Source: Guillardia theta CCMP2712 (Eukaryota > Protista > Cryptophyta). From it: a DNA stretch of 64,000 nt. A program made the position numbers and the translations under genes. The stretch spans positions 295,925 to 359,924 of the forward strand of contig NW_005434645.1 of NCBI RefSeq assembly GCF_000315625.1, given 5' to 3'. Shown here piece by piece: positions 10,342 through 40,469 of the stretch. Every line of letters begins with the position of its first letter. Position 1 is the first letter of the stretch. The notes under the pieces are model-generated. The model was not told the origin of the DNA. It searched no databases and worked only from the letters and a program-made list of their open reading frames with translations.

Positions 10342-13300
10342 ATGTCGGGCATGTTTCAGGTCAGTTCCGCTCTGGCCGTGGCGGTCTTGCTGCTCGCATC
10401 ATCTCATTTGGCTGGGGCTCAAAATGTTGTTTCGCCGAAGCAAACTACACCGCCTTCTGGAGGGAGTTCTGAGGTTTCGACCGTGCTCAGTACTGGAGCC
10501 AAATATAATAGCTCCTCTGCAGGCTCAAGCCAACTTGCTTATCTTCTCCTGCGGCATTGTTGGAATTGCTTTTGCGTCGTTCCTCTACTACTGTGTCTCA
10601 TTGGTGATGTTTTATTTCATATTCTTGCCTCTGGTCTGACAAGTTGGAAAGATCTCCTTGCGTTCCCCCAGCGATGATATGGAGCCGCTCGTCAGCTCTG
10701 CGAGAGCAGGAGAATCTGATGAGGTATGTACAGACTCCTATCACATCACGCACGTGTTGGTGGGAAAGTCGGTGGATCTCATCTGAAGTTGCCTTTCAAC
10801 AGGAGCTCATCACAATTTATGAGACCATCCGAGCAGGAGCAAGAGCCTTCTTGTGGGCCGAATATCAGGTGAGCACGGCGAGCTGTCATCTTTGCTTGTT
10901 TTTGTTTGGTACAATGTGGGAGGCTGATTTTAGATGTAGATCTGCTTCATCTTCGTGGCTGGTTTCTCCGTTTTGATCTTGCTCATGGTTTCCCACACCA
11001 ACACCAACGGCTGGGATTTTACCGTCGGTGATGCCAAGCTTGCACAAGGATTATGATGGGTGGGTCTTTAACATTGTGTATAGGTGGACTTACTGCGCTC
11101 TCGTTCATCGTTGGAGCATTGACTTCTATTCTTGCGGGATTCATCGGAATGATGGTTGCTGTGTATTCGAATGCACGTACCACCGGTGCAGAACATGATT
11201 TGAAACTTGTTATTTGCTAACCATGTGAGCCAGTGTCCGCAAAGAAGGAAGGAGAGTATGGCTGGAGCGCTGCATTCAATACTGCATTCCGCGCTGGTGG
11301 AGTGATGGGCTACTCGCTCTGCTCCTTGTCGCTCATGATCCTCTACACCTTGTGTCTTGTTTACCGTGGAATCTTCACCGGTGCAGATGGGAAAACAGAT
11401 TACAAGACCGTGTTCGAGTGCATTGCCGGTTATGGTCTTGGTGGCTCTGCCATTGCCATGTTCGGCCGTGTTGGAGGAGGAATTTTTACCAAGGCTGCTG
11501 ATGTTGGTGCGGATCTTTCGGGCAAGGTTATTGGCGTGGGTGATGGCAAGAAGCTCGATGAGGATTCTCCTTACAATCCAGCATGCATTGCCGACAACGT
11601 TGGAGACAACGTGGGAGACGTTGCTGGAATGGGATCTGATTTGTTCGGTTCTTTTGGAGAGGCAAGCTGCGCTGCCATGCTCGTGGGCTCTGCGTCTGTT
11701 TCAATCGAGAATGAGGGATGGGCTGCCCTTGTGTTCCCTCTCTTCATCAGCGCCATCGGAATTGTTGCTTGCATGGTTGTTTCTTTCATTGCCACTGATA
11801 TCCAACCGGTCCGCTGTGAAGCAGACATTGAGAAGGCTCTCAAGATTCAGCTCCTCGTGACTTCGATCGCCATGACAGCTCTCCTCTATCCAGTCGCTGC
11901 TTGGGCTCTTCCCGAATCCATCTTACTGTCGGTCAATGGCAAGGATGCCCTTGTTACCCCAACTATCTGCTACTTCTGCACTATTTCTGGCCTTTGGGGT
12001 GGATGCCTCATTGGATTCATCACCGAGTATTTCACAAGCCACAGCTACACCCCTGTACGTGACGTCGCTCGTTCTACTGAAACCGGTGCGGCCACCAACA
12101 TCATTTACGGATTGGCTCTTGGTTACAAATCAGCTATTCTGCCAGTGATCATCTTGTCTGCTATCATCTTCCTCTCCCTCAAGAGTGCTGGAATGTATGG
12201 AGTTTCCCTTGCTGCACTCGGAATGCTCTCCACTCTGGCTACCTGCCTCACCATTGATGTGTATGGACCTATCTCCGATAACGCTGGTGGAATTGCTGAG
12301 ATGGTTGAGATGCCGTCGTCTGTGCGTGACAAGACCGATGCTCTTGATGCCGCTGGAAACACCACTGCTGCGATCGGAAAGGGCTTTGCCATTGGATCTG
12401 CTGCCCTCGTTTCCTTGGCCTTGTTTGGTGCCTTCGTTACCCGCGTCGCGTCGAATGGGAATAGCCCACTCTCAACAGGTGCAGTCAACCTCTTGTCCCC
12501 TGTGGTTTTCGCGTTTTTGGTGTTTGGTGCCATGGTGCCATACTGGTTCTCCGCCATGACCATGCGATCTGTCGGTGAGGCAGCCAACGCTATGGTCAAG
12601 GAGGTTGGTAGGCAATGGGCTGAAATCCCGGGCTTGAGCGACAGTGCTGGCCTTGATTTCCATGAGCGTCAGGAATGGAGAAGCCAGGGCAGAACCCTCG
12701 CGAAACCAGATTACCAGGCGTGCATTGCCATCGCCACGAAGGCTTCCCTCAAGGAGATGGTCCCGCCTGGTCTTCTTGTGATCCTTAGCCCAATCTTGGT
12801 CGGCACCTTCTTCGGAGTGGAAGCTGTTGCTGGGCTCTTGACTGGCGCCACTGCGTCATCTGTGCAGCTCGCCATCTCCATGTCCAACACTGGAGGTGCT
12901 TGGGACAATGCCAAGAAGTACACCGAGAAAGGTGAACTCAACGGCTGGTTCCCTTACCGCGATGGACGTCCCATTGCTCAGAACTGGTATGAGCAGGCAG
13001 CGAAGAACAACGGAGATTCTTGCCTTGTGCAGAGAGTCCGTATGGGAGGCGCTGACAAGGAGGTGCCAATCAGGCAGTGGCTGTCGGACTTGCAGAGGAC
13101 GGATCCCGCCAAGTACAACAAAATCATGGCAGGAGACGAGCCAGTGGAGACGGCCGATGGGCGCAACGTCATCTATGCTGGGAAGAAGTCTTCAGCTCAC
13201 GCTGCCGCTGTCGTCGGAGACACTGTGAGGAGCAGCGGGAGTGTGATGTTGCCCTCAGTGACACATGTTACAGGTTGGAGATCCTCTCAAGGACACCTCG

Positions 13301-13420
13301 GGGCCTGCGCTCAACATCGTCATGAAGCTCATGGCTATCATCTCAGTCGTTTTCGCTGACTTTTTCATGTCTATCAACCATGGAGGCGGGCTCTTCAACA
13401 CCGGATCAGGCCCCAACTAG
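10342..13420 (+). CDS. AVP1: Membrane H+-translocating inorganic pyrophosphatase (V-PPase), K+-dependent type, with N-terminal signal peptide
   Basis: Motifs [64 protein letters not shown] (Ala form = K+-dependent), [10 protein letters not shown], and after a last intron (~13225-13273) [20 protein letters not shown]...GSGPN* (TAG 13418-13420). Start [26 protein letters not shown]. Confidence 0.95.
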
Positions 13421-22135: not shown

Positions 22136-23344
22136 ATGAGAGACAGAGAGAGGAGACAGAGATGCGCGAGGAAGGGCTCGATGCCGGAGGAGGAGCTCGT
22201 CGCAGGAAAGGGCCGGATGAAGGTCCTTCGGGTCGTGACCTTACTGTTCTTCGCTCTCACGTCGCTCCTGGTGTTCGTGAAGCTCTTCATCTACTCTCAG
22301 CACGAGGGCATGTTCGATCCACGAGGAGGCGAGGCCGAGGGGAGAAGACTTCTGCCCGCACCAGCCAGAGAGCTGGGCTCCTTCTTCTCGCTCCAGGGCT
22401 CTAGCAACACTATCTGCCCTTCAATCCGTTCCTCGGACTGGGTCGAGTTTGACTTCCCTCCCCACCCCCGGAAACCAGCGGGCAACGAGACGAGCATATG
22501 GGTGGGGGTGATGGTCAACGACGAGGTGGAGATGCTGAGGCTGCTGCTGGAGATGTACAGCAAGACCGTTACGGGGGTGGTGGTCGTACAGAGCCGGCAC
22601 ACGCTGTCGAACCGCAGGAAGAACCTGTCCATCACCAGGGACGACATTAGGTTTGCGCCCTTCAGAGACTTCTTCTACCTCGTCTCCATCGACGGGAGGG
22701 CCGAGGGGTTCCAGTACTGGGAGAACGAGGCGCTACAACGATGCGCCATCGGAAACGTGGGATTCAAGAAGCTACCGATCCAGGACAGCGACGCGGTCCT
22801 AGTCACAGATGTAGACGAGATCGTGAAGCCTGAGGTCCTGGCCAAGATGAGCAGCAGCATCCGGCACAACCAGGCCGTCACTTTCTGCCTCACCTGGCAC
22901 TTCTCGCACTTCGGGAGAGTTCTGGAGTCAGGATGCAAAACGGTCAGGGGCCTGGTTTCAGGGAGCTTCCTGAAGAACATGCTGCAGTACAACACCAACG
23001 CAGTCAGGAACGTGGCGGCGAATCCCAACAACAAGCATGCGGAGGAGATCAGTGTCGGGAGTGGGCCGGGCAGGACGTGCGAGCGAGCCGGCAACATCGT
23101 TGGGTGGCACTGCTCCTGGTGCTTCGGGTCGGCGGAGGAGTATGGGAACAAGATGAAGTCGTTTGCTCACTCGGAGATGTCTCCTTCTGCCAGCAACCCC
23201 GACCTGATCCGCGACATGATGTGCCAGGGTAAGTGGGTCACGGGAGGGGTCCACGGGATGGAGCTGGACTGCAGCATCCCGCCTATTCAGCTCCCCGACT
23301 ACTTCCATGCATGGAAAAAGAACTGCAGCAAAGGGTCGCCATGA
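22136..23344 (+). CDS. Glycosyltransferase family 17 (MGAT3/GnT-III-like), single exon, type II membrane protein
   Basis: N-terminal TM anchor VLRVVTLLFFALTSLLVFVKLFIY; motifs NDEVEMLRLLL, VVVQSRHTLS, EALQRCAI, VLVTDVDEIV (DxD), GWHCSWCF, KMKSFAHSE. Confidence 0.88.
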   Translation: MRDRERRQRCARKGSMPEEELVAGKGRMKVLRVVTLLFFALTSLLVFVKLFIYSQHEGMFDPRGGEAEGRRLLPAPARELGSFFSLQGSSNTICPSIRSSDWVEFDFPPHPRKPAGNETSIWVGVMVNDEVEMLRLLLEMYSKTVTGVVVVQSRHTLSNRRKNLSITRDDIRFAPFRDFFYLVSIDGRAEGFQYWENEALQRCAIGNVGFKKLPIQDSDAVLVTDVDEIVKPEVLAKMSSSIRHNQAVTFCLTWHFSHFGRVLESGCKTVRGLVSGSFLKNMLQYNTNAVRNVAANPNNKHAEEISVGSGPGRTCERAGNIVGWHCSWCFGSAEEYGNKMKSFAHSEMSPSASNPDLIRDMMCQGKWVTGGVHGMELDCSIPPIQLPDYFHAWKKNCSKGSP

Positions 23345-26600: not shown

Positions 26601-26744
26601 CGCTGGGTGTAAGGGGTACGGTAGTGATAGTGACAATTTATTCCTTTAAGACCGGGCCATCAAAGAACCTCAGTGACAATACTTAATCATGGGCGCCCCC
26701 ACTCAGGCTCCACAGCCGTCACGGCGACCGTCACCTTGTGTCCC

Positions 26745-27524
26745 TTACAAACGAGAGGTCATCGCATACCCTAGCAACGACAGCAGCAGAGGCATGTACA
26801 GCGACGAAAGGGTCCTGGGCGCTGCTGAATTGCAGTTGGTGTCACTACATGCTGCTTTGGATTTTTCAGAAGCGATGATGGAGTCAAGCTTGGCTGAGTC
26901 GGCGGTGCAGAGGTTTGAAACGTATGACCTCGTCGCGCTGCAGCACTCCACCACTGTGGTGGTGGTCGTTGCGCACTGGGAGTCTGAAGTACAGCCTGTG
27001 GTTATTGATGAATACGCAGAGCACAGGTCCGAGCACTTGGTGGCCTTGGCGGGCTATACAAACATCACCGTCAATGATGCCATCAATCGATTCATACAAA
27101 GATGCATTGCAGCACTCACCACACCGTAGCCAGCACAAATACCAGAGATTAAGATGGCACAAGCAGCATCGGTTGAAGGTATGACGGCCGCGCCAACAAG
27201 AGACAGAGCCAATCCCGCGTCTGCTTCACTTTGCGAGGTACAGCTGCCGTACTGGACGGTTCTCGTTCCGCAGCTTCCTGCACAAACGATCGCAAAGCCT
27301 CATATCAGACGCTGGCCGGGTTAAACGAGCTCAATAGGACCCGAGGCAGGATAGATCCAAACAATGGTAAGAAAGACAACCGGAGAGCAGGACGGAGCAA
27401 GGTATACGAATCAAAGTGAGAAAGAAAGGCTCGCCTCACCTACGGTGACATCGCTCTTCTTGGCAATGTTGCAAGTGACGGCTGATGCTGTCGCGATCGC
27501 CGTCAGGACGAGGAAAGCTCGCAT
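26745..27524 (-). CDS. Cys-rich secreted, putatively GPI-anchored surface protein, paralogue A (3 exons)
   Basis: MRAFLVLTAIATASA signal peptide; two GT-AG introns in the same positions as B and C; exon 2 GSCGTRTVQYGSCTSQSEAD...CAILISGICAGYGV; exon 3 PAKATKCSDLC...CSDTNCNSAAPRTLSSLYMPLLLSLLGYAMTSRL*; AAGGAATAAA block about 100 bp downstream. Confidence 0.85.
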
Positions 27525-28233
27525 CGTCACTGGCATGCTTGGTCGTTCCTCGGCCCCTCCCGGCGCATATTTATTATTACTCCCCTGATACGTTGTAGAT
27601 AGGGGACCAAAGACTGCTCTATAGGCCACTAGGACCGATGAAGTACCCTGGCATCCCTGCGAATCCTTCTACTAGGCTGGTTGCAACCGGTACTCAGGTC
27701 ACCCACCCACCCTAGGAAAAAGAACTGGTCATTGCCAAGTACGGTCTCTACTATAAATGTAAATGGTACTAAATGGTACTAGCCACCTCCGTGTCATCCC
27801 GTAGTAACGCCACTCACAATAGGCCCAAGGCATTATACCTACAGAGGCCAACAGTCGTGTATAATCATGAATATAAGGTTACTGTCAACTTCAAAGGAAC
27901 AAGTAGACTGTATCTATCCGCATCTACCCACCCCCCTTGCAGCCTTTACTAAACTTGGCAAGTTCAGCACGTCCGACGGGTACTGCCGCATAGCAAACTC
28001 TGACAGCTGGACAATTATCATTCTGGCAGAGTACCGGTGTCATTCTAATCGCCAATGAATGAAGATTAGTCAAGCTAGTACTGACATGGTACTATCACTA
28101 AAGAGCCACATCTGTCATTGGTACTGGCATATGAAAGCCACTGATGCACTAATAATAATAAAACTTAAAGTGTGATGGTCGTAAATCTGAAAATCGGGCG
28201 GCTCGGACCTACTCTCATGTCACAGTATCACTC

Positions 28234-28393
28234 TCTTTACTCAAAGTTAAGTTAAAAATCAGTACGAGGATCGGACAATCAGGAGAGTCACGGCGAGGAG
28301 GCTTGACCGTACCCTGTGTCAGGGTCAAGCCTCCTCCGAGTCGTCTCTCCTGATTGTCCTCGTACTGATTTTTAACTTAACTTTGAGTAAAGA
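28234..28393. mobile_element. ~160-bp foldback (MITE-like) palindrome
   Basis: Left arm tctttactcaaagttaagttaaaaatcagtacgagga...caatcaggagag...gaggaggcttgacc pairs with right arm ggtcaagcctcctc...ctctcctgattgtcctcgtactgatttttaacttaactttgagtaaaga. No clear target-site duplication. Confidence 0.65.
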
Positions 28394-28989
28394 AAGTACC
28401 CTGACACTCTCAGTGACTGAGACTCCGGGCCTGATGAGTCAGGCTCCGAGGCTCCGAGTCGCCGCCGGATTCAAAACTCCGACTCCGAAAGCCCGTGACC
28501 CAGTCACGAAGCCAACATGGTTGTAGCGCCGTCTTATGGCCCTCCCATCTTGTGCATAGGAGCTGGGTTGGTTTGCATTGGTCAGAATTCTGCCACTACG
28601 AAGCAGCAGAGCTAAGGCTGTCTCTTCCCTCCTCGTCTTCGTCCTCCTCCTCTCACCACCCGAATGTTTCAAGTTTACGCGACCCAGACATCAGCAGCGA
28701 GGGCTCAACGCACCTCCACTGGATCACACAAAGATAAAAACACATGTTCTAATACTCATGTATGTTGCAGACTGTAAACAATTTCATGAAATATGTGAGT
28801 TTCTGTTCAATTTTCACTGTTCGGCACAACGCCAACATGTTGTTGTTGGAGATAAATTCAGCGATCTGTTGCGTACAAAATCACATAGACAAAGGAAAAA
28901 GTATATTGAGTTGTGTGTAATAATATCCATCTTGATTCAACATCTTAATTGGAAAAATTTTCTAATACAAATGTACAGAATATGATATG

Positions 28990-29890
28990 AGCGAAATTGG
29001 GTTTTTATCTTTCAGACTTCTTAAACACCCAACTGTCGCAGTGGAGGAGGTTTGTTACTTGATTGCAGGCTTCGAACATGAGTATTGCATCCATCAACGG
29101 TCTTCAAGTGTCTCCCACGCTACTTTTTTCTCCCTCGAGTTAAAGACCTCAACATTTCTGGAATGCTCGCTCCGCGCCCTGATTTCCGTGGCTCCCTCCG
29201 TGGCAAAACCGTAGACGGAAACAAGAATCTACACAACCTCTTACCTCCTTGCCTGCTGCAAGATTGCAATGGGTTCTCCAGATTTGCCTGCATGTCTCTG
29301 AGTAATTTTCATGCTTCTCAGTCGAGATAGGCCTCTTCAAAACTTGAAATTGTTCCAGTGCTCATCAACATTTGATATGAGGTACTCCAATCATTTTCTT
29401 TACCTTCTCTTTCATACCTACACTAAACCTTGTAACTCTTGACTTCCATCGTGCACTTTGATGATATTCATTACAATCAAGTCCATTTTCTTTCTCAGAG
29501 CAGCTTCTTTGCACTTAGTTCACCTCGTAAACTGTGAAATTGAAGTTGATGCAGAAAACCACTCCGCATGGAATATGACCATCTCCCATTGTTTTCCGCA
29601 CATGTTAAAGCTGTAAGCAATTGACCTCAGTCTTTAAGCATTTCATGCGTCTCGTCATCACATATGGATGACGAGATCTTGTGCTGTGGGATCGTCAAAT
29701 CATCTGTTCCGGCATCAATCTTGCACTCAGATGTTTCTCTCGTGCTGGTGCATGGCGAGTCATACCATGTCTGTTCACTTTACAAATGAGTCTTTAGGCC
29801 TTTCTCCAACACTCAGCAGTATCATTTTCCCCTGCACGATGATTCTCAAACCTTCTAGATGATGTTTTACCCTGTTTTGAACGAAAAAAA
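28990..29890 (-). pseudogene. AT-rich decayed coding-like sequence
   Basis: Protein-like minus-strand runs broken by many TGA stops (RVKHHLEGLRIIVQGKMILLSVGERPKDSFVK*; NGRWSYSMRSGFLHQLQFHSLRGELSAKKLL*EKENG); unidentified. Confidence 0.3.
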
Positions 29891-30843
29891 ACATCAGAAA
29901 AATATTTCTGAACGACACAATCGACGAACCATTTTTTCACAGTAACCTCCAACGAAATGCTAGAAGAAGTGACTGATTAACACGAATAACATGCGATTAC
30001 GAAGACACTTGGCGTGGAAACAATTTCAGGCGCTACTTGGGTGAAACAGACATGAACCAGCCAGTGCTAACATCCGTCTGATGAGTAGTAGCGCAACGAA
30101 GTAGCTCTCATCAGGTCCCATCAAGTACTCAAAACTCTACTGAAAGCGCTTGTTCTTACCTCATATGCCCCAAGGCCCACCACGGCAAGTCTTGCTGCAC
30201 AGATCTGACCTCCAACACTATGCATAGCTTGCCTAAACTAGTCCCCACCAAGACCCCTGTGTTTGCGCAATCTTTCCGCATGATTCCGGTTGTTTGAGAA
30301 TGTTTGATCGCACATCCCTGTCCTTCTGCACTATCCTGCTCTTCCTGCTCCCTCCTGCTCCTCCCTCCCCTCTTCCCCCAGCCCTCTGCTCCTCCCTCCC
30401 TCCCCAGCACCTCTTTCTTTAGCTCCCTCTACTGTTGTCTGTATGGATGAGACGGTGGAGAAAGATGAGATAGTGGAAGGGAAAGGGAAAGGCCAGAGAA
30501 ATGGGAGGAAAGAGGAGCCAAAGGAGAAGGAGGAGGCAGCTGAGACAGAGAAGCCTGGGGAAAGCGAGAACACTGGGGGCGAAAGAGAGGAGGGAGGATT
30601 GAGGAGCTCCGAGGTAGGAGAGAGGGAGGGAGAAAAGAGAAAGAGAAGGTGAAAAGCATCATCCATTGTCCTTTCATCAATACATGGAAAACTATAGCAG
30701 TGCGGCGCACGCAGCTCACTTTGCTTCCTAACCAATCCCCACTCCTGCCATTGCTCTGAGCGTATGCACTCGGACCCGCCTCACGGTAAAGACATAAGAA
30801 TTTTAGAAGGCAGAGATTGATCATTACCGTGATCCCCTCAGAG

Positions 30844-30885
30844 TTTACTCAAAGTTGAGTTAAAAATCAGTACGAGGACAATCAG
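30844..30885. repeat. 42-bp copy of the foldback arm (inverted relative to 28350-28391)
   Basis: tttactcaaagttgagttaaaaatcagtacgaggacaatcag is the reverse complement of 28350-28391 with one mismatch. Confidence 0.9.
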
Positions 30886-31173
30886 TCTACTAGTGAGTAC
30901 TTGGATGTTTTTTTTTATCTGACTAGGAGGCACCAGCAGACTACTTCCGTGGGAGGGTGGGGTCATGCTTCAGAGTCCTACAGGGGGTGGGTACTCTAGT
31001 ATGAGCCCCCTACTACCGGGTGCTAAGTGTGAACCAGTAGTTTCGAAGTTAACACTGAAGTCCCCTAGGACGCTACGGCTGTGTACGATAGTCTTACTAT
31101 TACCCGGTTACCTAGGGTCAGACTGATTAAAACGGGTCGCCGGGAGGGGCCAAAAGGAACGACCGGCATGGCC

Positions 31174-31854
31174 ATGCGAGCTTTCCTCGTCCTGACGGCG
31201 ATCGCGACAGCATCAGCCGTCACTTGCAACATTGCCAAGCAGGGGGATCTCTCCGTAGGTGAGGCGAGCCTTTCTTCTCTCCGATGTCTCCCTATTGTTC
31301 ATCTTTAAACGCATCTTCGGGCAGGGAACTGCGGAACGAAAACCATCCAGTACGGCAGCTGTACCTCGCAAAGTGAAGCGGACACCGCATTGGTTCTGTT
31401 GCTTTTGAGTGCAGCCTTCATACCTTCAACCGATGCTGCTTGTGCCGCCTTCATCACTGGTATTTGCTCTAGCTACGGCGTGGTGAGTGCTGCAATACAT
31501 CTTTGTATGAATCGATCAATGGCATCATTGACGGTGATGTTTGTATAGCCCGCCAAGGCCACCAAGTGCTCGGACCTGTGCTCTGGATATGCATTTTCCC
31601 AAGGCTGCACTTCAGACTCCCAGTGCGCAACGACGTCCACCACAGTGTTGTCGTGCTGCAGCTCGACGAGGACAGCCATCTCAAACCTCTGCACCGCCGA
31701 CTCAGCCAAGCTTGACTCCATCATCGCTACTGAAAAATCCAGTGGAGCATGTAGTGACACCAACTGCTATTCAGCAGCGCCCAGGACCATTTCGTCGCTG
31801 TACATGCCTCTGCTGCTGTCGTTGCTGGGGTATGCGATGACCTCTCGTTTGTAA
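31174..31854 (+). CDS. Cys-rich secreted, putatively GPI-anchored surface protein, paralogue B (3 exons, 182 aa)
   Basis: Exons 31174-31258, 31325-31482, 31549-31854 splice in phase; signal peptide, 14 Cys, C-terminal small-residue site (YSAA) then hydrophobic tail SSLYMPLLLSLLGYAMTSRL*; AATAAA at 31981. Confidence 0.88.
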
Positions 31855-32929
31855 GGGATCAGTGCCGGGCTCAGTCACAAGGTGACGGTCGTCGTGATGG
31901 CAGTGGAGCCTCAGTGGGGGCGGTGGAGGCTGAAGAAGTAGAGAGAAGGTGAAACCTGAGTAGAGGCACGTAGTTGAAGGAATAAACCGTCACTCAAAGT
32001 CTGATCTACCCACCTGGATGCACCTTTGACGCTACCGGGGAGAAGTGTTAGCCGCCGTCTCGCCTTTGACCGTACGTTGTGGATCCAGTTGGTTGAATGC
32101 AAAGTACAAGTGAAGCCTTCGCACACGGAACTCGTTGCTAGCCCAGCCAGATGGGTACAGTTAAGGTTGATGGGTTGCAGACGTGTACAGCGAATGCTGA
32201 AAGCACCTCGCTGGATCGCACATTCTTAAACTCCCACTTGTGCTATTTTGATGCACATCCCGTACTGATCATGGACACTGTGTCAGGGATATTTTGAGTG
32301 GTACTGGATATCCCTTGCAATGCTTCTTCAATGTCCTGATCCTTGTTCCCCTGATTGTCGTGCATGCCGCTGCTCGTGTTGTTGGAGTAGAGGTTTTTGC
32401 TGCTGCTTCCTTTCTCCTGGTCTCTTGCTGAGACGGATATGTTTGTTTATCCTCTCCGACGTAGCTTGCTCCTGTTTGTCCCCTCCTCTTCAGTAAACCG
32501 AAGAAGATCATTCTCTATCTTCTGCTTCTCCTCGCCCCCTCCACATGGCATGGAAGGCAACAATTGACATGTATACATGGTGAGCGATGGTCCTCATAAG
32601 AATCTACTGATGCACACAACACTCATACACAGCAGCTTTCATCGACTCGACGGGCTCCACATCTGCAACAGAGGGAACCATTACCAACAACCAGTGAGTG
32701 TCAGTTCGATTGTACAGAGACAACTTGAGCTCTATGTTACTCTCAGTTGTATCCTATTGCTCTGATAGCCTTGAAGCTTTACGGGTTCAAGGCTGCAGAC
32801 GTCTACACCGACTGCTCAAGGCCATGGCGCCGTGGTGTGAGGGATGGATGGTGCGATGGCGCGATGGTGTGTGGATGGGATCGGATGGGATTTGGTGTGT
32901 GAGTCCTTTGGATTGTTGTCTTTATCATA

Positions 32930-34030
32930 CACTATCTACTTCTTCGACTTCCCAGCGGCCGGCTCCTTGGGGGGAAGTGCAAACTTGGGCGGTGCTGCTT
33001 TCTTGGGCGGCTGGTACTGCAGCTCTGTTTTTGTGACCTTGCCCGCGTCTCTGTCCTTCTTCGATTCGTTCCTTTCGTTGAGGGTATGTTGTTATCCCTC
33101 GGACTCCGGGCAACCCACCCATGCTCCCATCCACTCCACCGATTGTCCTTGTCGGCAGTGATGAGTGGGTGTCTGCAAGCCTGGTGGCCATGGATGGCTT
33201 GATGGAAGCGATCTCGACGAGAGTCTTGAGGTCGTCGATGGTCTCGATGTCGATCTTTGGTGCGGGCTGTATGATGAAGTTGATCGTGCCTCAAGTGCCC
33301 ACGCAGCAGCTGCATCTCGGCGGAGAAGATCCTCTGGTTCATGCCCGCCTGGGATGTTAAACAATTGAAACACAGAGTTGATCCAATTGCCCTGCATCTG
33401 CGTGATGTCCTCCTCAGGCTTCAGGGCTGCCAGCATCTGGCTGTTGTAGTTCTTTGGAAGGATATGTAGGAGTGGTGGGTGGTTCCCGGAGTTGTCAAGG
33501 AATTCGTTCTCTAATGATAGGAGTTACTTAAGCTATGGTTAACTGAATCTATCTGTGCTGACGAGTTTTTCATCTCGCTGTGTTCCTCCTCGTTGACCCC
33601 CGCGATGAACCTCTCGTGCTCTTCCCTTACGAGGGGGAGGCTCAGCTGGAGGCTCAGCTGGCTGGCGAGAAAGTTTTCCCTTGGCTGATCCATCGGGATC
33701 TTCTTGTCCTTCCTCGAGCAACAACGTGTGCACAGGTGTTGCACGCGTCCGCAAAGGATCTGCGGGTCTTTGCCTCCCTCACAAGTTGCGGTTCTCATGG
33801 ATCAGGCCCGCCATCGGGACCTAACTTTCCTTGACATTCCCCGAGAGGATCTGTATCCAATACCTGAGAACCTTGGACTCCTCGTCGTACTCAAGAGTGA
33901 ATTTCGGTTCAAAGTCCATCTTCTTGGAGGCCTCATCCATGGATGAGCCTATGAAAAAGCCGCTGTTCGCGCTCCTCAGGGCATTGTCCTCGGCCATGGT
34001 GACCTTCTTGTTCGTGTCATCCTGAGTTTT
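32930..34030 (-). pseudogene. Frameshifted intronless ORF remnant, possibly from a mobile or viral element
   Basis: Protein-like blocks in alternating frames: MAEDNALRSANSGFFIGSSMDEASKKMDFEPKFTLEYDEESKVLRYWIQIL; LENEFLDNSGNHPPLLHILPKNYNSQMLAALKPEEDITQMQGNWINSVFQLF; GTINFIIQPAPKIDIETIDDLKTLVEIASIKP; KTELQYQPPKKAAPPKFALPPKEPAAGKSKK*. Confidence 0.5.
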
Positions 34031-34088
34031 TCAGAAAAAGTCAGTTTCGCACACATTTTCGTTCATAAGTTCGTGAAGACTTACATTT

Positions 34089-34756
34089 CCCCGTAACTCT
34101 TCCTTACGTTGCCCCGTAACTCTTCCTTACGTTGCCCTGTAACTCTTCCTTACGTTGCCCCGTAACTCTTCCTTACGTTGCCCCGTAACTCTTCCTTACG
34201 TTGCCCCGTAACTCTTCCTTACGTTGCCCCGTAACTCTTCCTTACGTTGCCCCGTAACTCTTCCTTACGTTGCCCCGTAACTCTTCCTTACGTTGCCCCG
34301 TAACTCTTCCTTACGTTGCCCCGTAACTCTTCCTTACGTTGCCCCGTAACTCTTCCTTACGTTGCCCCGTAACTCTTCCTTACGTTGCCCCGTAACTCTT
34401 CCTTACGTTGCCCCGTAACTCTTCCTTACGTTGCCCCGTAACTCTTCCTTACGTTGCCCCGTAACTCTTCCTTACGTTGCCCCGTAACTCTTCCTTACGT
34501 TGCCCCGTAACTCTTCCTTACGTCTTCCTTACGTTGCCCCGTAACTCTTCCTTACGTTGCCCCGTAACTCTTCCTTACGTTGCCCCGTAACTCTTCCTTA
34601 CGTTGCCCCGTAACTCTTCCTTACGTTGCCCCGTAACTCTTCCTTACGTTGCCCTGTAACTCTTCCTTACGTTGCCCCGTAACTCTTCCTTACGTTGCCC
34701 CGTAACTCTTCCTTACGTTGCCCCGTAACTCTTCCTTACGTTGCCCCGTAACTCTT
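34089..34756. repeat. 23-bp tandem array (ccccgtaactcttccttacgttg), about 29 copies
   Basis: Near-identical units, two with c>t variants and one 11-nt internal duplication near 34520; each unit has the inverted motif CGTAA-N7-TTACG. Confidence 0.97.
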
Positions 34757-36045
34757 TCTTGTGAAGCACGTCTTGGTTGCATTTCTTTGTCCGCTGAATC
34801 AAAATCTCCCAAATGGAAGTCATCGATAGGGTTTTTTCTTGACGGCAACGGTGGGTCGCCTTCCATGTCAATCTGAAAGATTTTCTTGGATTCATCTTAC
34901 AGGACCACCTGTGTATGATGGTAGATCAGATGTAAACCAAATGAAGGGCTAGAAGAGTCCGCACCAGACTGTTAACTCTAAGAGACTCAGCTGTCTCTAA
35001 TGACTGACACATCCTGTCGTCCAATAGCCCCATCGAACGGAAGTGCTTGTCCTTTCAGACCATCTATTGTTACCTCTTCAACCTTGAGCAGCACCGTTCT
35101 CTTACCCACATCGGCCGCTTGAACTTGTCCTCCATGATCTTCATCATTCTCACTATCATTTAGAGAATCACAATCTTGTGCTCACATGGTATTAATCTCA
35201 TATTGATGAGCTCAGCTTCCTTGCTGAGCAAGAGAGTTAGAAGTCCTCCGACACCCTCCTCAGCCTCCAGGCATAGGATTGGGTGCATTCTGTGTCAGCT
35301 AGTAGATCACACTGATCTATACCAGTCAAGACTAAACAGTTTCTAACACAGATTGCATGAATAGTACGCGATGCGCATCAAAATACCACAAGTAGGAGGT
35401 TAAGAATGTACTTCAGGAAAGTATGGAGGTCAGGACACAAAGTTTACTGTCATGCTAACACCGAATCGATGAACTCAAGTCAGGAAAGCTCACTTCCCTG
35501 TTTGCACCATGCAACTCAAGACCTGTCCGCGGATCACTTTCTCTATTCGAGCGATCAACTGTTGAACGTCCATGAATGTGAAAATACCTGGAGTAATTTT
35601 CAGAATGAATCAACTATCTCAAACTTGTCTGTGTTCTCAGTCAATGAACAATTAGAACAAAGGATTAGAGGCGCCTCTAGACACGCTACCCGCAAGCATG
35701 TAGCACAAATTGTGCATCCATGGGGCATTGAGACTTAGTGATGAGTTGATTCCAGTAAAGGCGATGGCGAGTGGTAAATGGCATATATGAACTTCCATTG
35801 GAGCCAGTTGATGTTGCATAGCGCTACATCAGGTTTGAGACTGCTCACTCCACACTTTCAGCACTGTGTGAAAAGGCACTGCAACGTTTCAGTCACCTCA
35901 AAACTTTTGACGGTTTATTCCTTCAACAAGATGCCCCTAGTCATCTTACTTGAAAGCCTTCAGCCTCCTTGCCACCGCCCCCACTGCCAGGCTCCACTGC
36001 CGTCACGACAACCATCGCCTCATTACTGAACCTGGCGCTGATCCC

Positions 36046-36749
36046 TTACAAACGAGAGGTCATCGCATACCCCAGCAACGACAGCAGCAGAGGCATGTAC
36101 AGCGACGAAAGGGTCCTGGGCGCTGCTGAATAGCAGTTGGTGTCACTACATGCTCCACTGGATTTTTCAGAAGCGATGATGGAGTCAAGCTTGGCTGAGT
36201 CGGCGGTGCAGATGTTTGAGATGGTAGACCTCGTCGTGCTGCAGCACTCTACCAGTGTAGTGGTGGTCGTTGCGCACTGGGAGTCTGAAGTACAGCCTGA
36301 GCTAAACTGAAGGGAAGAGCACAGGTCCGAGCACTTGGTGGCCTTGGCGGTCTGTACGAATACCACATTCATTGATGGCTTCAATCGATAGGACACTCAC
36401 CAGGCCGTAGTCAACACACCTAGCAGAGATGAAGGCGGCACAAGCAGCGTCGGTTGAAGGTACGAGGGCCGCACCGAGAGACATCATGGCAATCTGGGTG
36501 TCTGCATCACTTTTCGAGAGACAGCTGCCGTACTGGAGAGTTTTTTTCCCGCAGTTTCCTGCCAGAAGATGAGTCGAAAGAGTGACAGGGAGAAAGACAT
36601 CGGAGAGCCGGACAGTGCAAGGTATACGAATCAACTTGAAGTGAGAAAGAAAGGCTCGCCTCACCTACGGTAACATCGCCCGTCTTGGCAATGTTGCAAG
36701 TGACGGCTGATGCTGTCGCGATCGCCGTCAGGACGAGGAAAGCTCGCAT
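36046..36749 (-). CDS. Cys-rich secreted, putatively GPI-anchored surface protein, paralogue C (3 exons)
   Basis: Same signal peptide and intron positions; exon 2 GNCGKKTLQYGSCLSKSDADTQIAMMSLGAALVPSTDAACAAFISARCVDYGL; exon 3 TAKATKCSDLCSSLQFSSGC...YSAAPRTLSSLYMPLLLSLLGYAMTSRL*; conserved gttgaaggaataaaccgtca downstream. Confidence 0.88.
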
Positions 36750-37368
36750 GGTCATGCTTGGTCGTTCCTCGGCCCCTCCGCCACGTTTATTTAAAACCAA
36801 CCTGCAGCCTTTAGGTAACCGGGTACTATTACAGTACCCACCCCTAACCTCTAACCAGTCAACTTTGCAAGAGATGCCAGCTATATCAGTTCCTAGGACC
36901 AATACCAGAGGCAGATAGGAACTCGTAATACGACCGTGCACCCACCCCTAAAGGACTCCCGGAACCGTGCCATGGCTCCACCCCACCTAGCAACAATATC
37001 CGTATAATAAAAAAATAGTCATTCTAGCCGATATATAACGATATTACCTTGTACTGCTTGCGCTTCTACCTCGACTATTATCTTTTATTTCGCCGTACTA
37101 TCAGGAGCTCTACAGTACTGCTCGTTGTAAAAACTATACTCTGCAATGTTAAAGGGTCTCAATTCGTGATACTAACTTGCGGTCGATTTTTCAGGAACCG
37201 TGGTACTAGTTTTACTCAAATGCATTGAAATCATCTGGCCCAATGACAAAAGTACATTTCCAGAGGTCGAGGTGGTGAACCGTTGCGGGCAAAACGAGTA
37301 CCCTTAATTTGATACAATAAAACAAGGGGTGGGTGGAGACTAGAGTTGGTCAAATTGATCGTTTGAAT

Positions 37369-39836
37369 TCAAATCGAAAGGGAGCCTAGGTTGTATGATA
37401 GCATCTGCTGCTGCGGCCGTTGGGACGACGACACGTAGCCAGGGCGCCTGTAGCTGCCGCCTTGGTAGCCCCACCTGTCACTCCCTCCTCTCTGCCCATA
37501 GGAGCTCCTGCCGCTGCGTGGAGTGAGATAGCTTGCAGCACGTGTGGCCATATCATAACATTCACCTGCTCCTGCCGTACCTGTCCCTCCCCGAGTATCC
37601 TGAGCGGCTCATGGCTGGACGACCAGAGATGGTCAGGGAGGAAGACGTAAGGGTTGTCAGGGTGCTCACATGAACGTCGTCTCAGGGAGGCGAGATGAGT
37701 CAAGAAGTCAGGGATGGGTTGGTTCGCCTTGGTCAGAATCTGCGAAGCAGCAGAGTTAAGGTCACCTCTTCACTCGAACTGATGTCTCTTTCTCGTTCTC
37801 CCTCCTCCTTTCACCACCATCACCACCATCTCCTTCCCTCTCGTTCTTTCCCTTCCTCCATTCTCCTCCTCCTCCTCCTCCTCGCTCCAGCCCCCCCTCC
37901 GCCCCACCCTCTCCCTACCACCCAAAAAATTTCCCTGCCCAATGCCCCTCGTCCTCCTTGCTCTACCTTGATCAGATCGCCTGCGCTTCCTGCGTCTCCA
38001 TCGCAGATGAAGGTGTGAGCATGTCCCTTGGCGCCAGCACGGCCTGTCCGCCCGACACGATGCACCCAATCCTCCGCCTAGAGGCTAAGGGTGAGGGGCA
38101 CACATAGAGGAAGGATGCGGGAGTGAGGAGCCTACCCCGCTGGAGGGAAGATCGAAGTTGATGACGTGCGACACGCCTTTGATGTCCAGGCCCCTAGCAG
38201 CCACGTCTGTCGCTACGATAACCTGCTCGACATGCTTCAGCGTGAAGGTTCTTGTACACACGAGGGCAAGGAGAGGGCCAAAGGAAGCAAGGGTAGAAGA
38301 GGAAGGTATCTCAAGATGATCGGAGAAGATCCTGGTACCTGCGCTCTCCCAGACGTGAAGTCGTTGAGTGCTCGGAGCCTTTCATCCTGCAACTTGCCTC
38401 CATGGATACTCTAGAGGAATGATCAGTGCATGCTGTGAATGGTCTTCGATTCGCTCACTCGCGCTCTCCATGACTGTTGTCTCAGCTTTCTCGAGATAAG
38501 GTCGCAGTTCCGCTTTGTGTTGACAAAAATCTTGCGGAAGGAAAGTCAAAGTGACGCAGAAGCACAAGAATTCACTCACAATTATGCTCGCATCACATGC
38601 AGATGGATCAGGAGAGATGGTTTGAAGCACTTCAAGCAGCTTCGCCTCCTGCAGTCAAGCCAGTGAACGACATCCCCCGTCGCTTCTCCGGCTCACAAAC
38701 CTTGGTATGCGATCTCACGTGATGAAATTCTTGCACTACATCGCTGTTGACGATCAGCTCATCAACTCCGCCAACATTGACTTGAACGGCCTCATGCAAG
38801 TACGTCGCCGCAAGCTTCTGCACTCCTCTGCGACATCAGTCAGCCAACACATGGAGGAATCCAACCTCAATAACTACTTGGGCCAAGTAGCAGTAAAGGT
38901 GATTGTCTGTCTGACTGGATGTGCTGGAAGCGTCTTGAAAATCTTCTTGATCTGTGGCTCGAATCCCATATCCAACATCCTGTCTGCCTCGTCGAGCACA
39001 ACATACTCCACTTGGTCCAGCCGAGCTGTGCCGCAGTCTATGAAGTCATTGAGCCTTCCTGGAGTTGCGATGATGAGGTGAGCTCCCATGTTCAGTTGTC
39101 TCATCTGCATGCCCCTTCCAACACCTCCAAAGATCGCAACGTTTACAATACCGCATGACTTTCCAAACTTCTGCGCCTCTGCTGTGATCTGTACAACTAG
39201 CTCCCTAGTCGGTGCCAGCACGAGGGCATGAGAGCGTACTGGCGAGTTGGAATACTTGGACGACCGGGACCCTCGACGCTTCATCTCAAGATCAGGGCAC
39301 AACTTGAGAATCTTCATGAAGGCGCAGAACAGATACCCACACGTCTTCCCACTCCCTGTCTTCGCTACCGCCACCAGGTCTCTTTTGGCCGCCAGGTACG
39401 GCCAGCATTGAGCTTGGATGGGAGAAGGATGTTGAAACCCAGCAGCTCTCACCTCAGTCAGGATCTCCTGAGCGAAAGGCGCCTTGGCGAAAGTTTGGAT
39501 GGGATCCAACGGTATCGAGCTCTTGGGATCCTTGACCTGGATCTCGAACTTGGACCTGTACTCCGAGGGACTCACTCCATCCATCCCCAGCGAGGGAGGC
39601 TTGTCGTCATCCTGTGCTCCTCGTGACTCCAAGTACATCCGCTTCCCTCTCGTATCCAGTGTCCGCTGCGTTATGCTCTTGATCATGGTGCTGTCGATGG
39701 CAGACTGCTCGTGCCCTCCTCGAAGTCTGATGTCGTCCGCATGCAACAACAACCCGGAGGAGAGTGTGCTACAGGTTATGCTCACACAGAAACACAAGAC
39801 GAGGAAAGCAGCGTAGAGGAGGCGCTTCATATGCAT
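37369..39836 (-). CDS. DEAD-box RNA helicase, DBP2/DDX5-like, with N-terminal signal peptide
   Basis: Q motif [56 protein letters not shown], later exons with [11 protein letters not shown] and [10 protein letters not shown]; Arg/Gly-rich C-terminus; leader [23 protein letters not shown]. Confidence 0.93.
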
Positions 39837-40469
39837 GAGGTTGGCCCTTGCGAGCTTCAGAGTTTGCAGGGTTCTATGGGGCATATCTTTGCCCTTCCGT
39901 CTGTCTCCTTCGCTCAGTTTTTCCGGAGCATTTTCAAAATAAGAGGTCGAGGATCAGATTTGAATCTACAATAGGCAGTCAGAGATGATCGGCCAGGGGG
40001 CATTACAGCACAGTCAAACATTCCGCATCTACTAACTTTAACGGCTTCACTCAAGGCCGCATACATCATGTCTGCACAGCCCTCCCCGCAAAGGCACTCC
40101 TCTACATAGACTCCTCCCTGACCTTGCTATCTCGTCCGATTCTGCTATCTCTCTCGCCTCTTTCTCTCCTCCTTCCCCTTCCGTCTCCCCTGCCATCACT
40201 CTTCACGTGCCGCCATGGGACCCTAGCTAGGGTTTCGCCTTGGGGGCAGCACTACCCTCCTACCCCCAGCCTTACCCATAGCCCTCTCAATCTCCCGAAC
40301 CCCTGCACCCTACCCTACCTTACTATTCATCCTTCTTCATACCACAAAGTACCCGTAGTTGCCTCAGTCTCAACTATCTCGTGGCTCTGAGGCGGACAGG
40401 GCTGCTGCCAAAGAGCCTAGCAAGCGCCTCCTGGCTACTTTGATGTGTGTACGATATCATGGCATGCCT

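What the first reader, a model, noticed from the sequence alone, without database searches (positions are those of the whole stretch)
26745..36749. Three-gene cassette of an unrecognised 14-Cys GPI-type surface protein family with invariant ends and variable core
Seen: three intact 3-exon paralogues (A 26745-27524 minus, B 31174-31854 plus, C 36046-36749 minus) that the ORF track misses as whole proteins. They share an identical signal peptide, an identical final 20 residues (SSLYMPLLLSLLGYAMTSRL), all 14 Cys, both intron positions and an AAGGAATAAA 3' block. Residues between the Cys differ in patches (DAGLALSLVGAAVI / DTALVLLLLSAAFI / DTQIAMMSLGAALV; SAYSSITTG / SGYAFSQG / SSLQFSSG). A and B differ at 15 of 53 residues in exon 2, while their adjacent 66-nt intron 2 differs at only 3 positions. 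Established: a fixed Cys scaffold with a GPI anchor and variable loops typifies variant surface antigens and recognition proteins (e.g. ciliate immobilization antigens). Inference: a diversifying surface or recognition system (virus or predator evasion, mating or self recognition) in a probable alga.
Basis: partly seen in the sequence, partly recalled or inferred. Interest (0 to 1): 0.78.

Follow-up and report, generated by a model that had tools for sequence, protein, structure and literature searches.

The report
Gene-swapping algal 14-cysteine surface proteins
Three neighbouring genes of the alga Guillardia theta encode small, disulfide-braced, probably lipid-anchored surface proteins of an unnamed cryptophyte family with no known fold, and their "variable core" comes from patchy sequence exchange between copies, with no demonstrable selection for change.

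Summary
Three intact 3-exon paralogues (182-183 aa, 14 Cys) share an identical signal peptide, an identical C-terminal tail and their intron positions. The genome is Guillardia theta CCMP2712. Genes A and B already have public models, named only "hypothetical protein"; C has none.

The trio belongs to a five-copy subfamily within a family of about 20 loci in this genome. Homologues occur in other cryptophytes (Hanusia, Proteomonas, Rhodomonas) and in environmental data. All 14 Cys are invariant or nearly so across 33 distant members.

There is no Pfam, PDB-sequence or fold match, although the AlphaFold model is confident (pLDDT 86).

A GPI-type C-terminal signal is family-wide, and the genome encodes the GPI transamidase subunits.

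The "diversifying antigen" reading is not supported:
- dN/dS is 0.55-1.07.
- Synonymous and nonsynonymous divergence rise and fall together along the gene (rho 0.74).
- The copies are significant mosaics, which points to gene conversion.

This scan described the same family earlier at another locus (s1-446767). A twin note (s1-441425) noted the mosaicism.

Verdict: a real, undescribed domain family of a familiar general kind, of moderate interest.

The parts
26745..27536 (-). Gene A (public model EKX46672 / GUITHDRAFT_152285, P0003). Exons 27536(or 27524)-27440, 27277-27120, 27053-26745. Introns 27439-27278 (162 nt) and 27119-27054 (66 nt).
   Evidence: The spliced translation equals P0003 apart from the choice of start codon. 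It has 14 Cys and GT-AG introns.
31168..31854 (+). Gene B (public model EKX46673 / GUITHDRAFT_152286, P0001). Exons 31168(or 31174)-31258, 31325-31482, 31549-31854. Introns are 66 and 66 nt.
36046..36755 (-). Gene C, for which no public protein model was found. Exons 36755(or 36749)-36665, 36558-36401, 36351-36046. Introns are 106 and 49 nt.
   Evidence: A search with its exon 3 returned no 100% match among public proteins of 64-203 aa.
26637..26646 (-). AAGGAATAAA block about 100 nt 3' of the stop codon of A. It is a likely polyadenylation signal (inference).
31977..31986 (+). AAGGAATAAA block 3' of B.
35914..35923 (-). AAGGAATAAA block 3' of C.
27537..27570 (-). Conserved 5' leader (GGGAGGGGCC-GAGGAACGACC) just upstream of the ATG of A. 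The same block lies at about 31140-31167 (+) for B and about 36756-36790 (-) for C.
   Evidence: Alignment. Similarity between the copies ends about 330 nt upstream of the ATG and about 250 nt downstream of the stop codon.

Best explanation
The three genes are recent duplicates in a five-copy subfamily. The other two copies lie on scaffolds C27 and C41. The subfamily belongs to a cryptophyte family of about 20 genes in Guillardia theta.

Each gene encodes a small secretory protein with three parts:
- a cleavable signal peptide (cleavage ASA|V);
- one compact domain of about 140 residues, a beta-hairpin followed by helices, held by 14 invariant cysteines (presumably seven disulfides);
- a C-terminal signal with small residues (N-S-A-A), a 6-residue spacer and a 14-residue hydrophobic tail.

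The C-terminal signal is most likely exchanged in the ER for a GPI anchor. That would place the domain directly on the outer face of the plasma membrane, under or within the periplast.

The constant ends and variable core arise from patchy gene conversion among the paralogues, acting on a protein in which little beyond the cysteine scaffold is constrained. Recently converted segments (5' leader and signal peptide, intron 2, the 3' half of exon 3 and the 3' UTR) are near-identical even at silent sites. Unconverted patches keep older divergence at both silent and replacement sites.

Shown here: gene structure, family membership, Cys conservation, the signal architecture, the presence of transamidase genes, mosaicism, and dN/dS not above 1.

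Inferred: GPI anchoring, surface location, disulfide bonding, and function. My best guess at function is a structural, adhesive or ligand-binding coat protein of the cell surface, not a switching antigen.
For: - Gene models and Cys counts.
- Public models identical to A and B.
- Family size in this genome: 16 exon-3 matches, 17 exon-2 matches and 21 profile matches.
- Wider family: 60 representatives with E <= 1e-3 among 1.84 billion proteins. Every hit that carries an organism name is a cryptophyte: Hanusia phi, Proteomonas sulcata, Rhodomonas sp. CCMP768 and G. theta.
- Cys conservation: 10 Cys are invariant and 4 are at least 90% conserved in 33 sequences of 17-40% identity.
- Structure: the AlphaFold2 model has pLDDT 86.1 and pTM 0.71, with pLDDT above 90 over most of residues 21-160.
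- C-terminal signal: a stretch of small residues plus a hydrophobic tail of about 12-18 residues, followed by 0-9 further residues, occurs in nearly all complete members although the tail sequences differ. One Proteomonas member instead has a full transmembrane helix plus a cytosolic tail, which fixes the domain as extracellular.
- GPI machinery: Gpi16/PIG-T, Gaa1 and a C13 peptidase are present in the genome.
- Constraint: dN/dS is 0.55-1.07. Against the two off-window copies it is significantly below 1 in most pairs (p about 0.02).
- pS and pN co-vary along the gene, rho 0.74, p 0.0015.
- Mosaic structure: A resembles C at the 5' end, A resembles B from exon 2 to intron 2, and B resembles C at the 3' end. 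The runs test gives 80 runs against 116 expected, p <= 5e-5.
- In the five copies all 10 possible splits occur, 56% of site pairs fail the four-gamete test, and the PHI-like test gives p 0.009.
- Six of eight G. theta models form one clade with 86/94 support, which indicates a lineage-specific expansion.
Against: - No transcript or protein evidence exists for these five copies. Their 90% clusters hold only the genome-derived models, whereas a distant G. theta paralogue (P0043) is also present as an MMETSP transcript.
- Among A, B and C, dN/dS is about 1, which by itself would also fit loss of constraint.
- No GPI or signal-peptide predictor was available, so the anchor call rests on rules applied by eye and by script.
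- The tail of this subfamily is the least hydrophobic in the family (Kyte-Doolittle mean 1.7 over the best 12 residues) and ends in polar TSRL.
- Selection at individual sites cannot be excluded with five recombining sequences. Pooled over all ten pairs, the SAYSSITTG patch gives pN/pS 1.5 with nominal p 0.036, but the patch was chosen post hoc and the pairs are not independent.
Confidence: 0.68

Rival explanations
1. The subfamily is a diversifying surface or recognition system, used for virus or grazer evasion, or for mating or self recognition. Variable patches are kept different by positive selection, and mosaic gene conversion supplies new combinations, as in variant surface antigens.
For: - The ends are constant and the patches variable.
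- Segmental mosaicism is significant.
- dN/dS is about 1 within the trio, which is high for a gene with 14 invariant Cys.
- pN/pS is 1.5-2.1 in two short patches.
- The expansion is lineage-specific.
- An earlier scan note (s1-446767, not re-tested here) reports a few selected sites in another branch of the family.
Against: - No region has dN/dS significantly above 1 in the trio.
- Exon 2 gives 0.43-0.96.
- Silent divergence is as high as replacement divergence in the variable patches.
- Only five close copies exist, a small repertoire.
- There are no expression data.
- No Pfam family of any kind, surface-antigen families included, matches these proteins.
Confidence: 0.12
2. The trio consists of silent or decaying duplicates. 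These would be young copies under relaxed constraint that are not, or hardly, expressed, and the variable patches would be neutral drift plus conversion.
For: - dN/dS is 0.92-1.07 among A, B and C.
- No transcript-derived protein for this subfamily is in the collections searched.
- Gene C and the C41 copy were not modelled in the public annotation.
Against: - All five copies keep open frames, all 14 Cys, canonical splice sites and only codon-sized exon indels, while intron lengths vary freely.
- dN/dS is significantly below 1 against the C27 and C41 copies, and is 0.14-0.5 in the C-terminal part.
- The 5' leader and the AATAAA block are conserved.
Confidence: 0.1
3. The domain is a very divergent Frizzled-type cysteine-rich domain or another lipid or sterol-binding helical Cys-rich fold, working like plant GPI-anchored LTPs or folate-receptor/NPC1-type CRDs. 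It would act as a membrane-tethered binder of small hydrophobic ligands. The variable hydrophobic helix residues would line a pocket.
For: - UniRef names one distant G. theta member (P0043) "FZ domain-containing protein".
- The predicted order of a beta-hairpin followed by helices resembles Fz CRDs as I recall them.
- The variable patches are largely hydrophobic and lie in predicted helices 48-63 and 69-82.
Against: - The Pfam Fz profile hits four other loci in this genome and none of this family.
- Fz gives no hit on 33 members.
- hhalign of the family profile against the genome's own Fz domain gives probability 0.3%.
- Foldseek finds nothing.
- No LTP or elicitin Pfam family matches.
Confidence: 0.08
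4. Same protein but a different anchor. The hydrophobic C-terminus is kept as a short transmembrane anchor with a 4-residue cytosolic stub (TSRL), or is a cleaved propeptide of a soluble secreted protein, and is not replaced by GPI.
For: - A K or R lies within the last five residues in 33 of 62 family members, which resembles a positive-inside stop-transfer signal.
- One member has a true transmembrane helix plus tail.
Against: - The hydrophobic stretch is only 14 residues in the trio and mostly 12-18 in the family, short for a helix that spans the membrane.
- It is preceded by a run of small residues and a spacer that places the tail at omega+9 if omega is Ser161 of P0003, which is the classical GPI layout.
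Confidence: 0.15

Closest known systems
Ciliate immobilization antigens (Paramecium/Tetrahymena i-antigens) and other variant GPI surface antigens
   Same: These are GPI-type, cysteine-rich surface proteins encoded by multigene families. Sequence is exchanged between paralogues, and constant targeting signals flank more variable regions.
   Different: - i-antigens are large and built of periodic Cys repeats (from my own knowledge). Here there is one domain of about 140 residues with 14 non-periodic Cys.
- No Pfam family of any kind matches.
- No omega above 1 was found.
- Mutually exclusive expression is untested.
Plant GPI-anchored non-specific lipid transfer proteins (LTPG, 8-Cys motif)
   Same: A small, largely helical, disulfide-braced domain is followed directly by a GPI signal, sometimes via a Ser/Thr/Pro stalk. 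The genes form a multigene family with tandem copies.
   Different: There are 14 Cys and not 8, and an N-terminal beta-hairpin. No Pfam LTP or prolamin-superfamily hit was found, and no fold match.
Frizzled-type cysteine-rich domain (Pfam PF01392)
   Different: The Pfam profile, the profile-profile comparison and Foldseek are all negative. The domain has 14 conserved Cys against 10.
The same family at another G. theta locus (scan note s1-446767)
   Same: That note describes an unnamed family of about 20 small, disulfide-braced, probably lipid-anchored proteins, present as recent tandem duplicates. My count of about 20 loci and the tandem copies on scaffold C117 agree with it.
   Different: That note concerns another branch of the family. 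Here the copies alternate in orientation, are 4-5 kb apart, and exchange patches with two copies on other scaffolds.

Membership tests
GPI-anchored protein (class) | N-terminal cleavable ER signal peptide | tested here: met
   MRAFLVLTAIATASA|VTC has a hydrophobic core (best 10-residue Kyte-Doolittle mean 2.3) and small residues at -3 and -1. The test was rule-based, as no SignalP was available. No transit-peptide-like extension is present, because the first conserved Cys is at +3.
GPI-anchored protein (class) | C-terminal signal: small omega to omega+2 residues, a polar spacer of about 5-10 residues, a hydrophobic tail of 10-20 residues, and no cytosolic domain | tested here: met
   The trio ends ...NC-N-S-A-A-PRTLSS-LYMPLLLSLLGYAM-TSRL. 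The same layout, with different tail sequences, occurs in nearly all complete family members. No NetGPI or PredGPI was available.
GPI-anchored protein (class) | The organism has the GPI transamidase | tested here: met
   Gpi16/PIG-T on C34 (99.5 bits), Gaa1 on C56 (160.6 bits) and Peptidase_C13 on C85 (313.5 bits). GPI8 was not distinguished from legumain.
GPI-anchored protein (class) | Lipid anchor shown biochemically (PI-PLC release, or mass spectrometry of the omega site) | not testable with these tools
   This is a wet-lab test.
Variant surface antigen system | Excess of replacement over silent change (omega > 1) in exposed variable regions | tested here: not met
   Omega is 0.55-1.07 for the whole gene and 0.43-0.96 in exon 2. 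pS is as high as pN in the variable patches. Fisher tests are not significant in the trio.
Variant surface antigen system | Segmental gene conversion or mosaic paralogues | tested here: met
   Runs test p <= 5e-5. All 10 splits occur among five copies, and the PHI-like test gives p 0.009.
Variant surface antigen system | Mutually exclusive or switching expression | not testable with these tools
Frizzled CRD (PF01392) | Match to the family profile | tested here: not met
   No Fz hit on 33 members at E <= 0.1, nor on P0043 at E <= 10. A genome-wide Fz scan hits only unrelated loci. hhalign probability is 0.3%.
Frizzled CRD (PF01392) | Shared fold | tested here: inconclusive
nsLTP / prolamin superfamily (8-Cys motif) | Profile match or shared fold | tested here: not met
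   No Pfam hit. No LTP among the fold matches.

The most novel reading that the evidence does not exclude
The five-copy subfamily would be a gene-conversion-driven combinatorial surface system of a free-living alga. Short patches are shuffled among paralogues on three scaffolds to generate new surface variants for recognition or evasion, on a disulfide-rich fold that has no solved relative.
Probability: 0.1. Interest if true: 0.7.

Novelty: new variant of a known kind. Interest (0 to 1): 0.34.

Why it matters
Almost nothing is known about the cell-surface proteins of cryptophytes. This work defines a domain with 14 conserved cysteines that appears restricted to cryptophytes among named organisms. 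The domain has no Pfam entry and no detectable solved fold, although its predicted structure is confident. It is very probably displayed on the cell surface by a lipid anchor.

That gives a concrete candidate for surface or periplast biology, and for a new Pfam family or a structural-genomics target. The locus is also a clean small example of how patchy gene conversion can mimic the "constant ends, variable core" signature that is usually read as diversifying selection.

Tried and rejected
- **Pfam on single exons and on 33 whole members:** nothing real was found. A CX9C hit at E 0.05 and Collar/CBM_25/DDE hits at E > 0.02 are chance.
- **PDB searches:** the sequence profile gave no hit at E <= 10. 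P0043 alone gave only a chance tail-fibre hit.
- **Frizzled-CRD lead:** tested and not supported.
- **"Kazal-like" name on P0006:** this automatic UniRef name has no Pfam support.
- **Intron 2:** I asked whether its conservation reflects an RNA structure. The z-scores are +1.1, -0.4 and -1.0, so it does not.
- **Literature:** there are no papers on these accessions and none on GPI proteins of Guillardia.
- **Environmental loci L017-L020:** fetched but not analysed further.
- **Site-class codon models:** not run. codeml and HyPhy are not installed, and the demonstrated recombination would in any case make single-tree tests unreliable.
Full report
**1. Observation**

- Reading the DNA and building models in a script gives three 3-exon genes. 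Exon 1 is 85 nt and exon 2 is 158 nt in every copy. All introns are GT..AG and sit at the same positions.
- The products are 183/182/182 aa with 14 Cys each.
- A 57-nt stretch over the signal peptide, a 35-nt stretch over the C-terminal tail, the first 34 nt of exon 3 and an AAGGAATAAA block 3' of the stop codon each occur exactly three times in the window.
- Intron lengths differ freely (162/66/106 and 66/66/49 nt), while the only exon length difference is one codon. That is what real introns and a maintained reading frame predict.
- Similarity between the copies covers only the gene plus about 330 nt upstream and about 250 nt downstream.

**2. Whose genes they are**

- The window is contig C29 of an 87.1-Mb, 669-contig assembly.
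- A word search with the exon-3 reading frame of C returned three proteins named as Guillardia theta CCMP2712 hypothetical proteins.
- P0002 (EKX47077) is a further copy on scaffold C27.
- No public model of 64-203 aa matches C at 100%. None was found for a fifth copy on C41 either.

Method note. I handed no exon-joined sequence of my own to any search tool. Exons were searched by reference, and whole-protein steps used the public models that the tools returned. Whole-protein searches with C or the C41 copy were therefore left out. Exons were concatenated only inside local scripts, for translation and codon counting.

**3. Size and range of the family**

In this genome:
- Exon 3 of A finds 16 places in the genome: five at 76-100% identity and eleven at 29-48%.
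- Exon 2 finds 17 places, at the same loci and at the same distance upstream of exon 3.
- A profile of 15 exon-3 translations finds 21 matches.
- Other members also sit in local clusters: three in tandem on C117 and a divergent pair on C166.

Beyond this genome:
- A profile of six public full-length models, scored against 1.84 billion representative proteins, gave 60 hits at E <= 1e-3 and 17 at E <= 1e-10.
- Among the 20 representatives looked up, every one that carries an organism name is a cryptophyte. These are G. theta itself, Hanusia phi, Proteomonas sulcata and Rhodomonas sp. CCMP768.
- The rest are unnamed MMETSP transcripts and environmental contigs.
- In a tree of 31 members, six of eight G. 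theta models form one clade with 86/94 support. This is a lineage-specific expansion, with two older paralogues placed elsewhere.

**4. The domain**

- In an alignment of 33 members at 17-40% identity to A, ten Cys are invariant and the other four are at least 90% conserved. Almost nothing else is fixed.
- Pfam gives nothing for single exons or whole proteins.
- A profile search of all PDB sequences gives nothing at E <= 10.
- With the 33-sequence alignment, AlphaFold2 gives a confident model with mean pLDDT 86.1 and pTM 0.71. pLDDT is above 90 over most of residues 21-160. A first model from six sequences had pLDDT 69.8.
- The model has a beta-hairpin (residues 23-44) followed by helices at 48-63, 69-82, 92-98, 123-133 and 138-150.

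- The Pfam Fz profile hits four other loci in the genome and none of this family.
- It gives no hit on P0043 even at E <= 10.
- hhalign of the family profile against the genome's own Fz domain gives probability 0.3%.

I therefore do not file the domain under Fz. On present evidence it is an undescribed domain family.

**5. Targeting**

- The N-terminus is a textbook signal peptide (MRAFLVLTAIATASA|V). The first conserved Cys follows at +3, so there is no room for a plastid transit-peptide-like extension.
- The C-terminus reads NC-N-S-A-A / PRTLSS / LYMPLLLSLLGYAM / TSRL. That is small residues, a six-residue spacer and a 14-residue hydrophobic stretch, which puts the tail at omega+9 if omega is Ser161 of P0003.
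- The same architecture recurs in nearly all complete members although the tail sequences are unrelated: MSFAMLLLAVVASLTASKI, VSFVMVFLSSIVGLFVAARM, ISMALPALLAFFAMFFSRV and others.
- In some members a Ser/Thr/Pro-rich stalk of up to about 45 residues lies between the last Cys and the signal.
- One Proteomonas member replaces the signal by a full transmembrane helix and a cytosolic tail of about 35 residues. This fixes the domain as extracellular.
- The genome encodes Gpi16/PIG-T, Gaa1 and a C13 peptidase.
- GPI anchoring is thus well supported by inference but not shown. No GPI predictor or biochemical test was available.

**6. How the copies evolve**

Nei-Gojobori estimates:
- dN/dS is 0.92-1.07 among A, B and C, and 0.55-0.86 for pairs involving the C27 and C41 copies. 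In four of the six off-window pairs tested, it is significantly below 1 (p about 0.02).

The key point is that silent divergence follows the same landscape as replacement divergence:
- dS within the trio is 0.23-0.37 in exon 2, 0.00-0.02 in the last 54 codons, and 0 in the signal peptide.
- In the DAGLALSLVGAAVI patch pS is 0.39-0.52 against pN 0.38-0.42.
- Across 15 non-overlapping windows pS and pN correlate with rho 0.74, p 0.0015.
- Two short patches have pN/pS of 1.5-2.1. Neither is significant within the trio. Pooled over all ten pairs, one of them (SAYSSITTG) reaches nominal p 0.036, but the patches were picked post hoc and the pooled pairs are not independent.

The contrast between exon 2 and intron 2 is therefore not a signature of selection on the protein. 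It marks the boundary between segments of different age.

The copies are mosaics:
- Among A, B and C the odd one out changes in blocks. A resembles C in the leader, exon 1 and the start of intron 1. A resembles B from exon 2 through intron 2. B resembles C in the 3' half of exon 3 and the 3' UTR.
- The runs test gives 80 runs against 116 expected, p <= 5e-5.
- With all five copies, all ten possible bipartitions occur among 72 informative sites. Of all site pairs, 56% fail the four-gamete test, and a PHI-like permutation test gives p 0.009.
- Intron 2 is better conserved than either flanking exon, even against the C27 copy (5/66), but shows no RNA structure signal. I read it as part of a recently converted tract.

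**7. Interpretation**

The best-supported picture is a lineage-specific family of small, seven-disulfide, GPI-type surface proteins. The window trio is a young cluster homogenised by gene conversion.

It is also not excluded at single sites.

**8. Limits**

- The 90%-identity clusters of A, B and the C27 copy contain only genome-derived entries, whereas a distant paralogue (P0043) is also present as an MMETSP transcript. This is weak negative evidence on expression.

**9. Relation to earlier notes of this scan**

- s1-446767 described the same family (about 20 genes, probably lipid-anchored) at another locus. My counts agree with it.
- s1-441425 noted the mosaicism of this very stretch, and I confirmed it statistically.
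- Several notes named the genome Guillardia theta, which searches confirm.

Noticed in passing
window 34080-34760: A near-perfect minisatellite with a 23-nt unit (CTTACGTTGCCCCGTAACTCTTC), about 30 copies at 95-99% identity, lies between genes B and C.
   Followed up: no
window 28350-28391 and 30844-30885; also 28230-28270 / 28357-28397: 42-nt inverted repeats (98% identical) bracket a 2.45-kb low-GC segment between the heads of genes A and B, and a second nested 41-nt inverted pair lies beside them. This may be a TIR transposon or MITE. ORFs inside it have no Pfam hit.
   Followed up: partly
window 27054-27119, 31483-31548; L002 (C27 copy): Intron 2 (66 nt) is better conserved than the exons beside it: 3-7 differences of 66, against 16-27% divergence in exon 2. 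In A, B and the C27 copy it stays open in frame up to its last codon (TAG). It shows no RNA structure signal.
   Followed up: partly
window 36046-36755 (gene C); L005:1132-1806 (C41 copy): Two intact members of the subfamily appear to lack public protein models.
   Followed up: partly
P0006, P0008, P0013 (public G. theta models of other family members): Several public models of paralogues look mis-spliced. P0008 loses the last Cys-containing part, P0013 runs into an unrelated tail, and P0006 lacks part of exon 2. The genomic reading frames at L008, L009 and L013 are intact.
   Followed up: no
L011 (G000:C117:10356-13580): The third tandem copy on C117 is cut by an assembly gap (a run of N) just after the last Cys, so its C-terminus cannot be read.
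   Followed up: no
C-termini of P0001-P0006, P0008, P0025, P0035, P0053: Ten of 62 family members end in a tripeptide of the form [SA]-[KR]-[LMIFV], such as SRL, ARL, ARM or SKI. This resembles a peroxisomal PTS1, which should be irrelevant behind a signal peptide. A K or R lies in the last five residues of 33 of the 62 members.
   Followed up: no
window 22136-23344 (+), 38874-39884 (-), 11233-13359 (+): Neighbouring reading frames carry a GT17 glycosyltransferase, a DEAD-box helicase and an H+-pyrophosphatase. None has an evident link to the family.
   Followed up: no
L019, L020 (JGI metagenome contigs Ga0315899_10037282, Ga0315905_10019076): Environmental genomic contigs encode a homologue 73% identical to P0063. 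The match is spread over about 590 nt for 169 residues, which implies an intron. The source organism was not identified.
   Followed up: no
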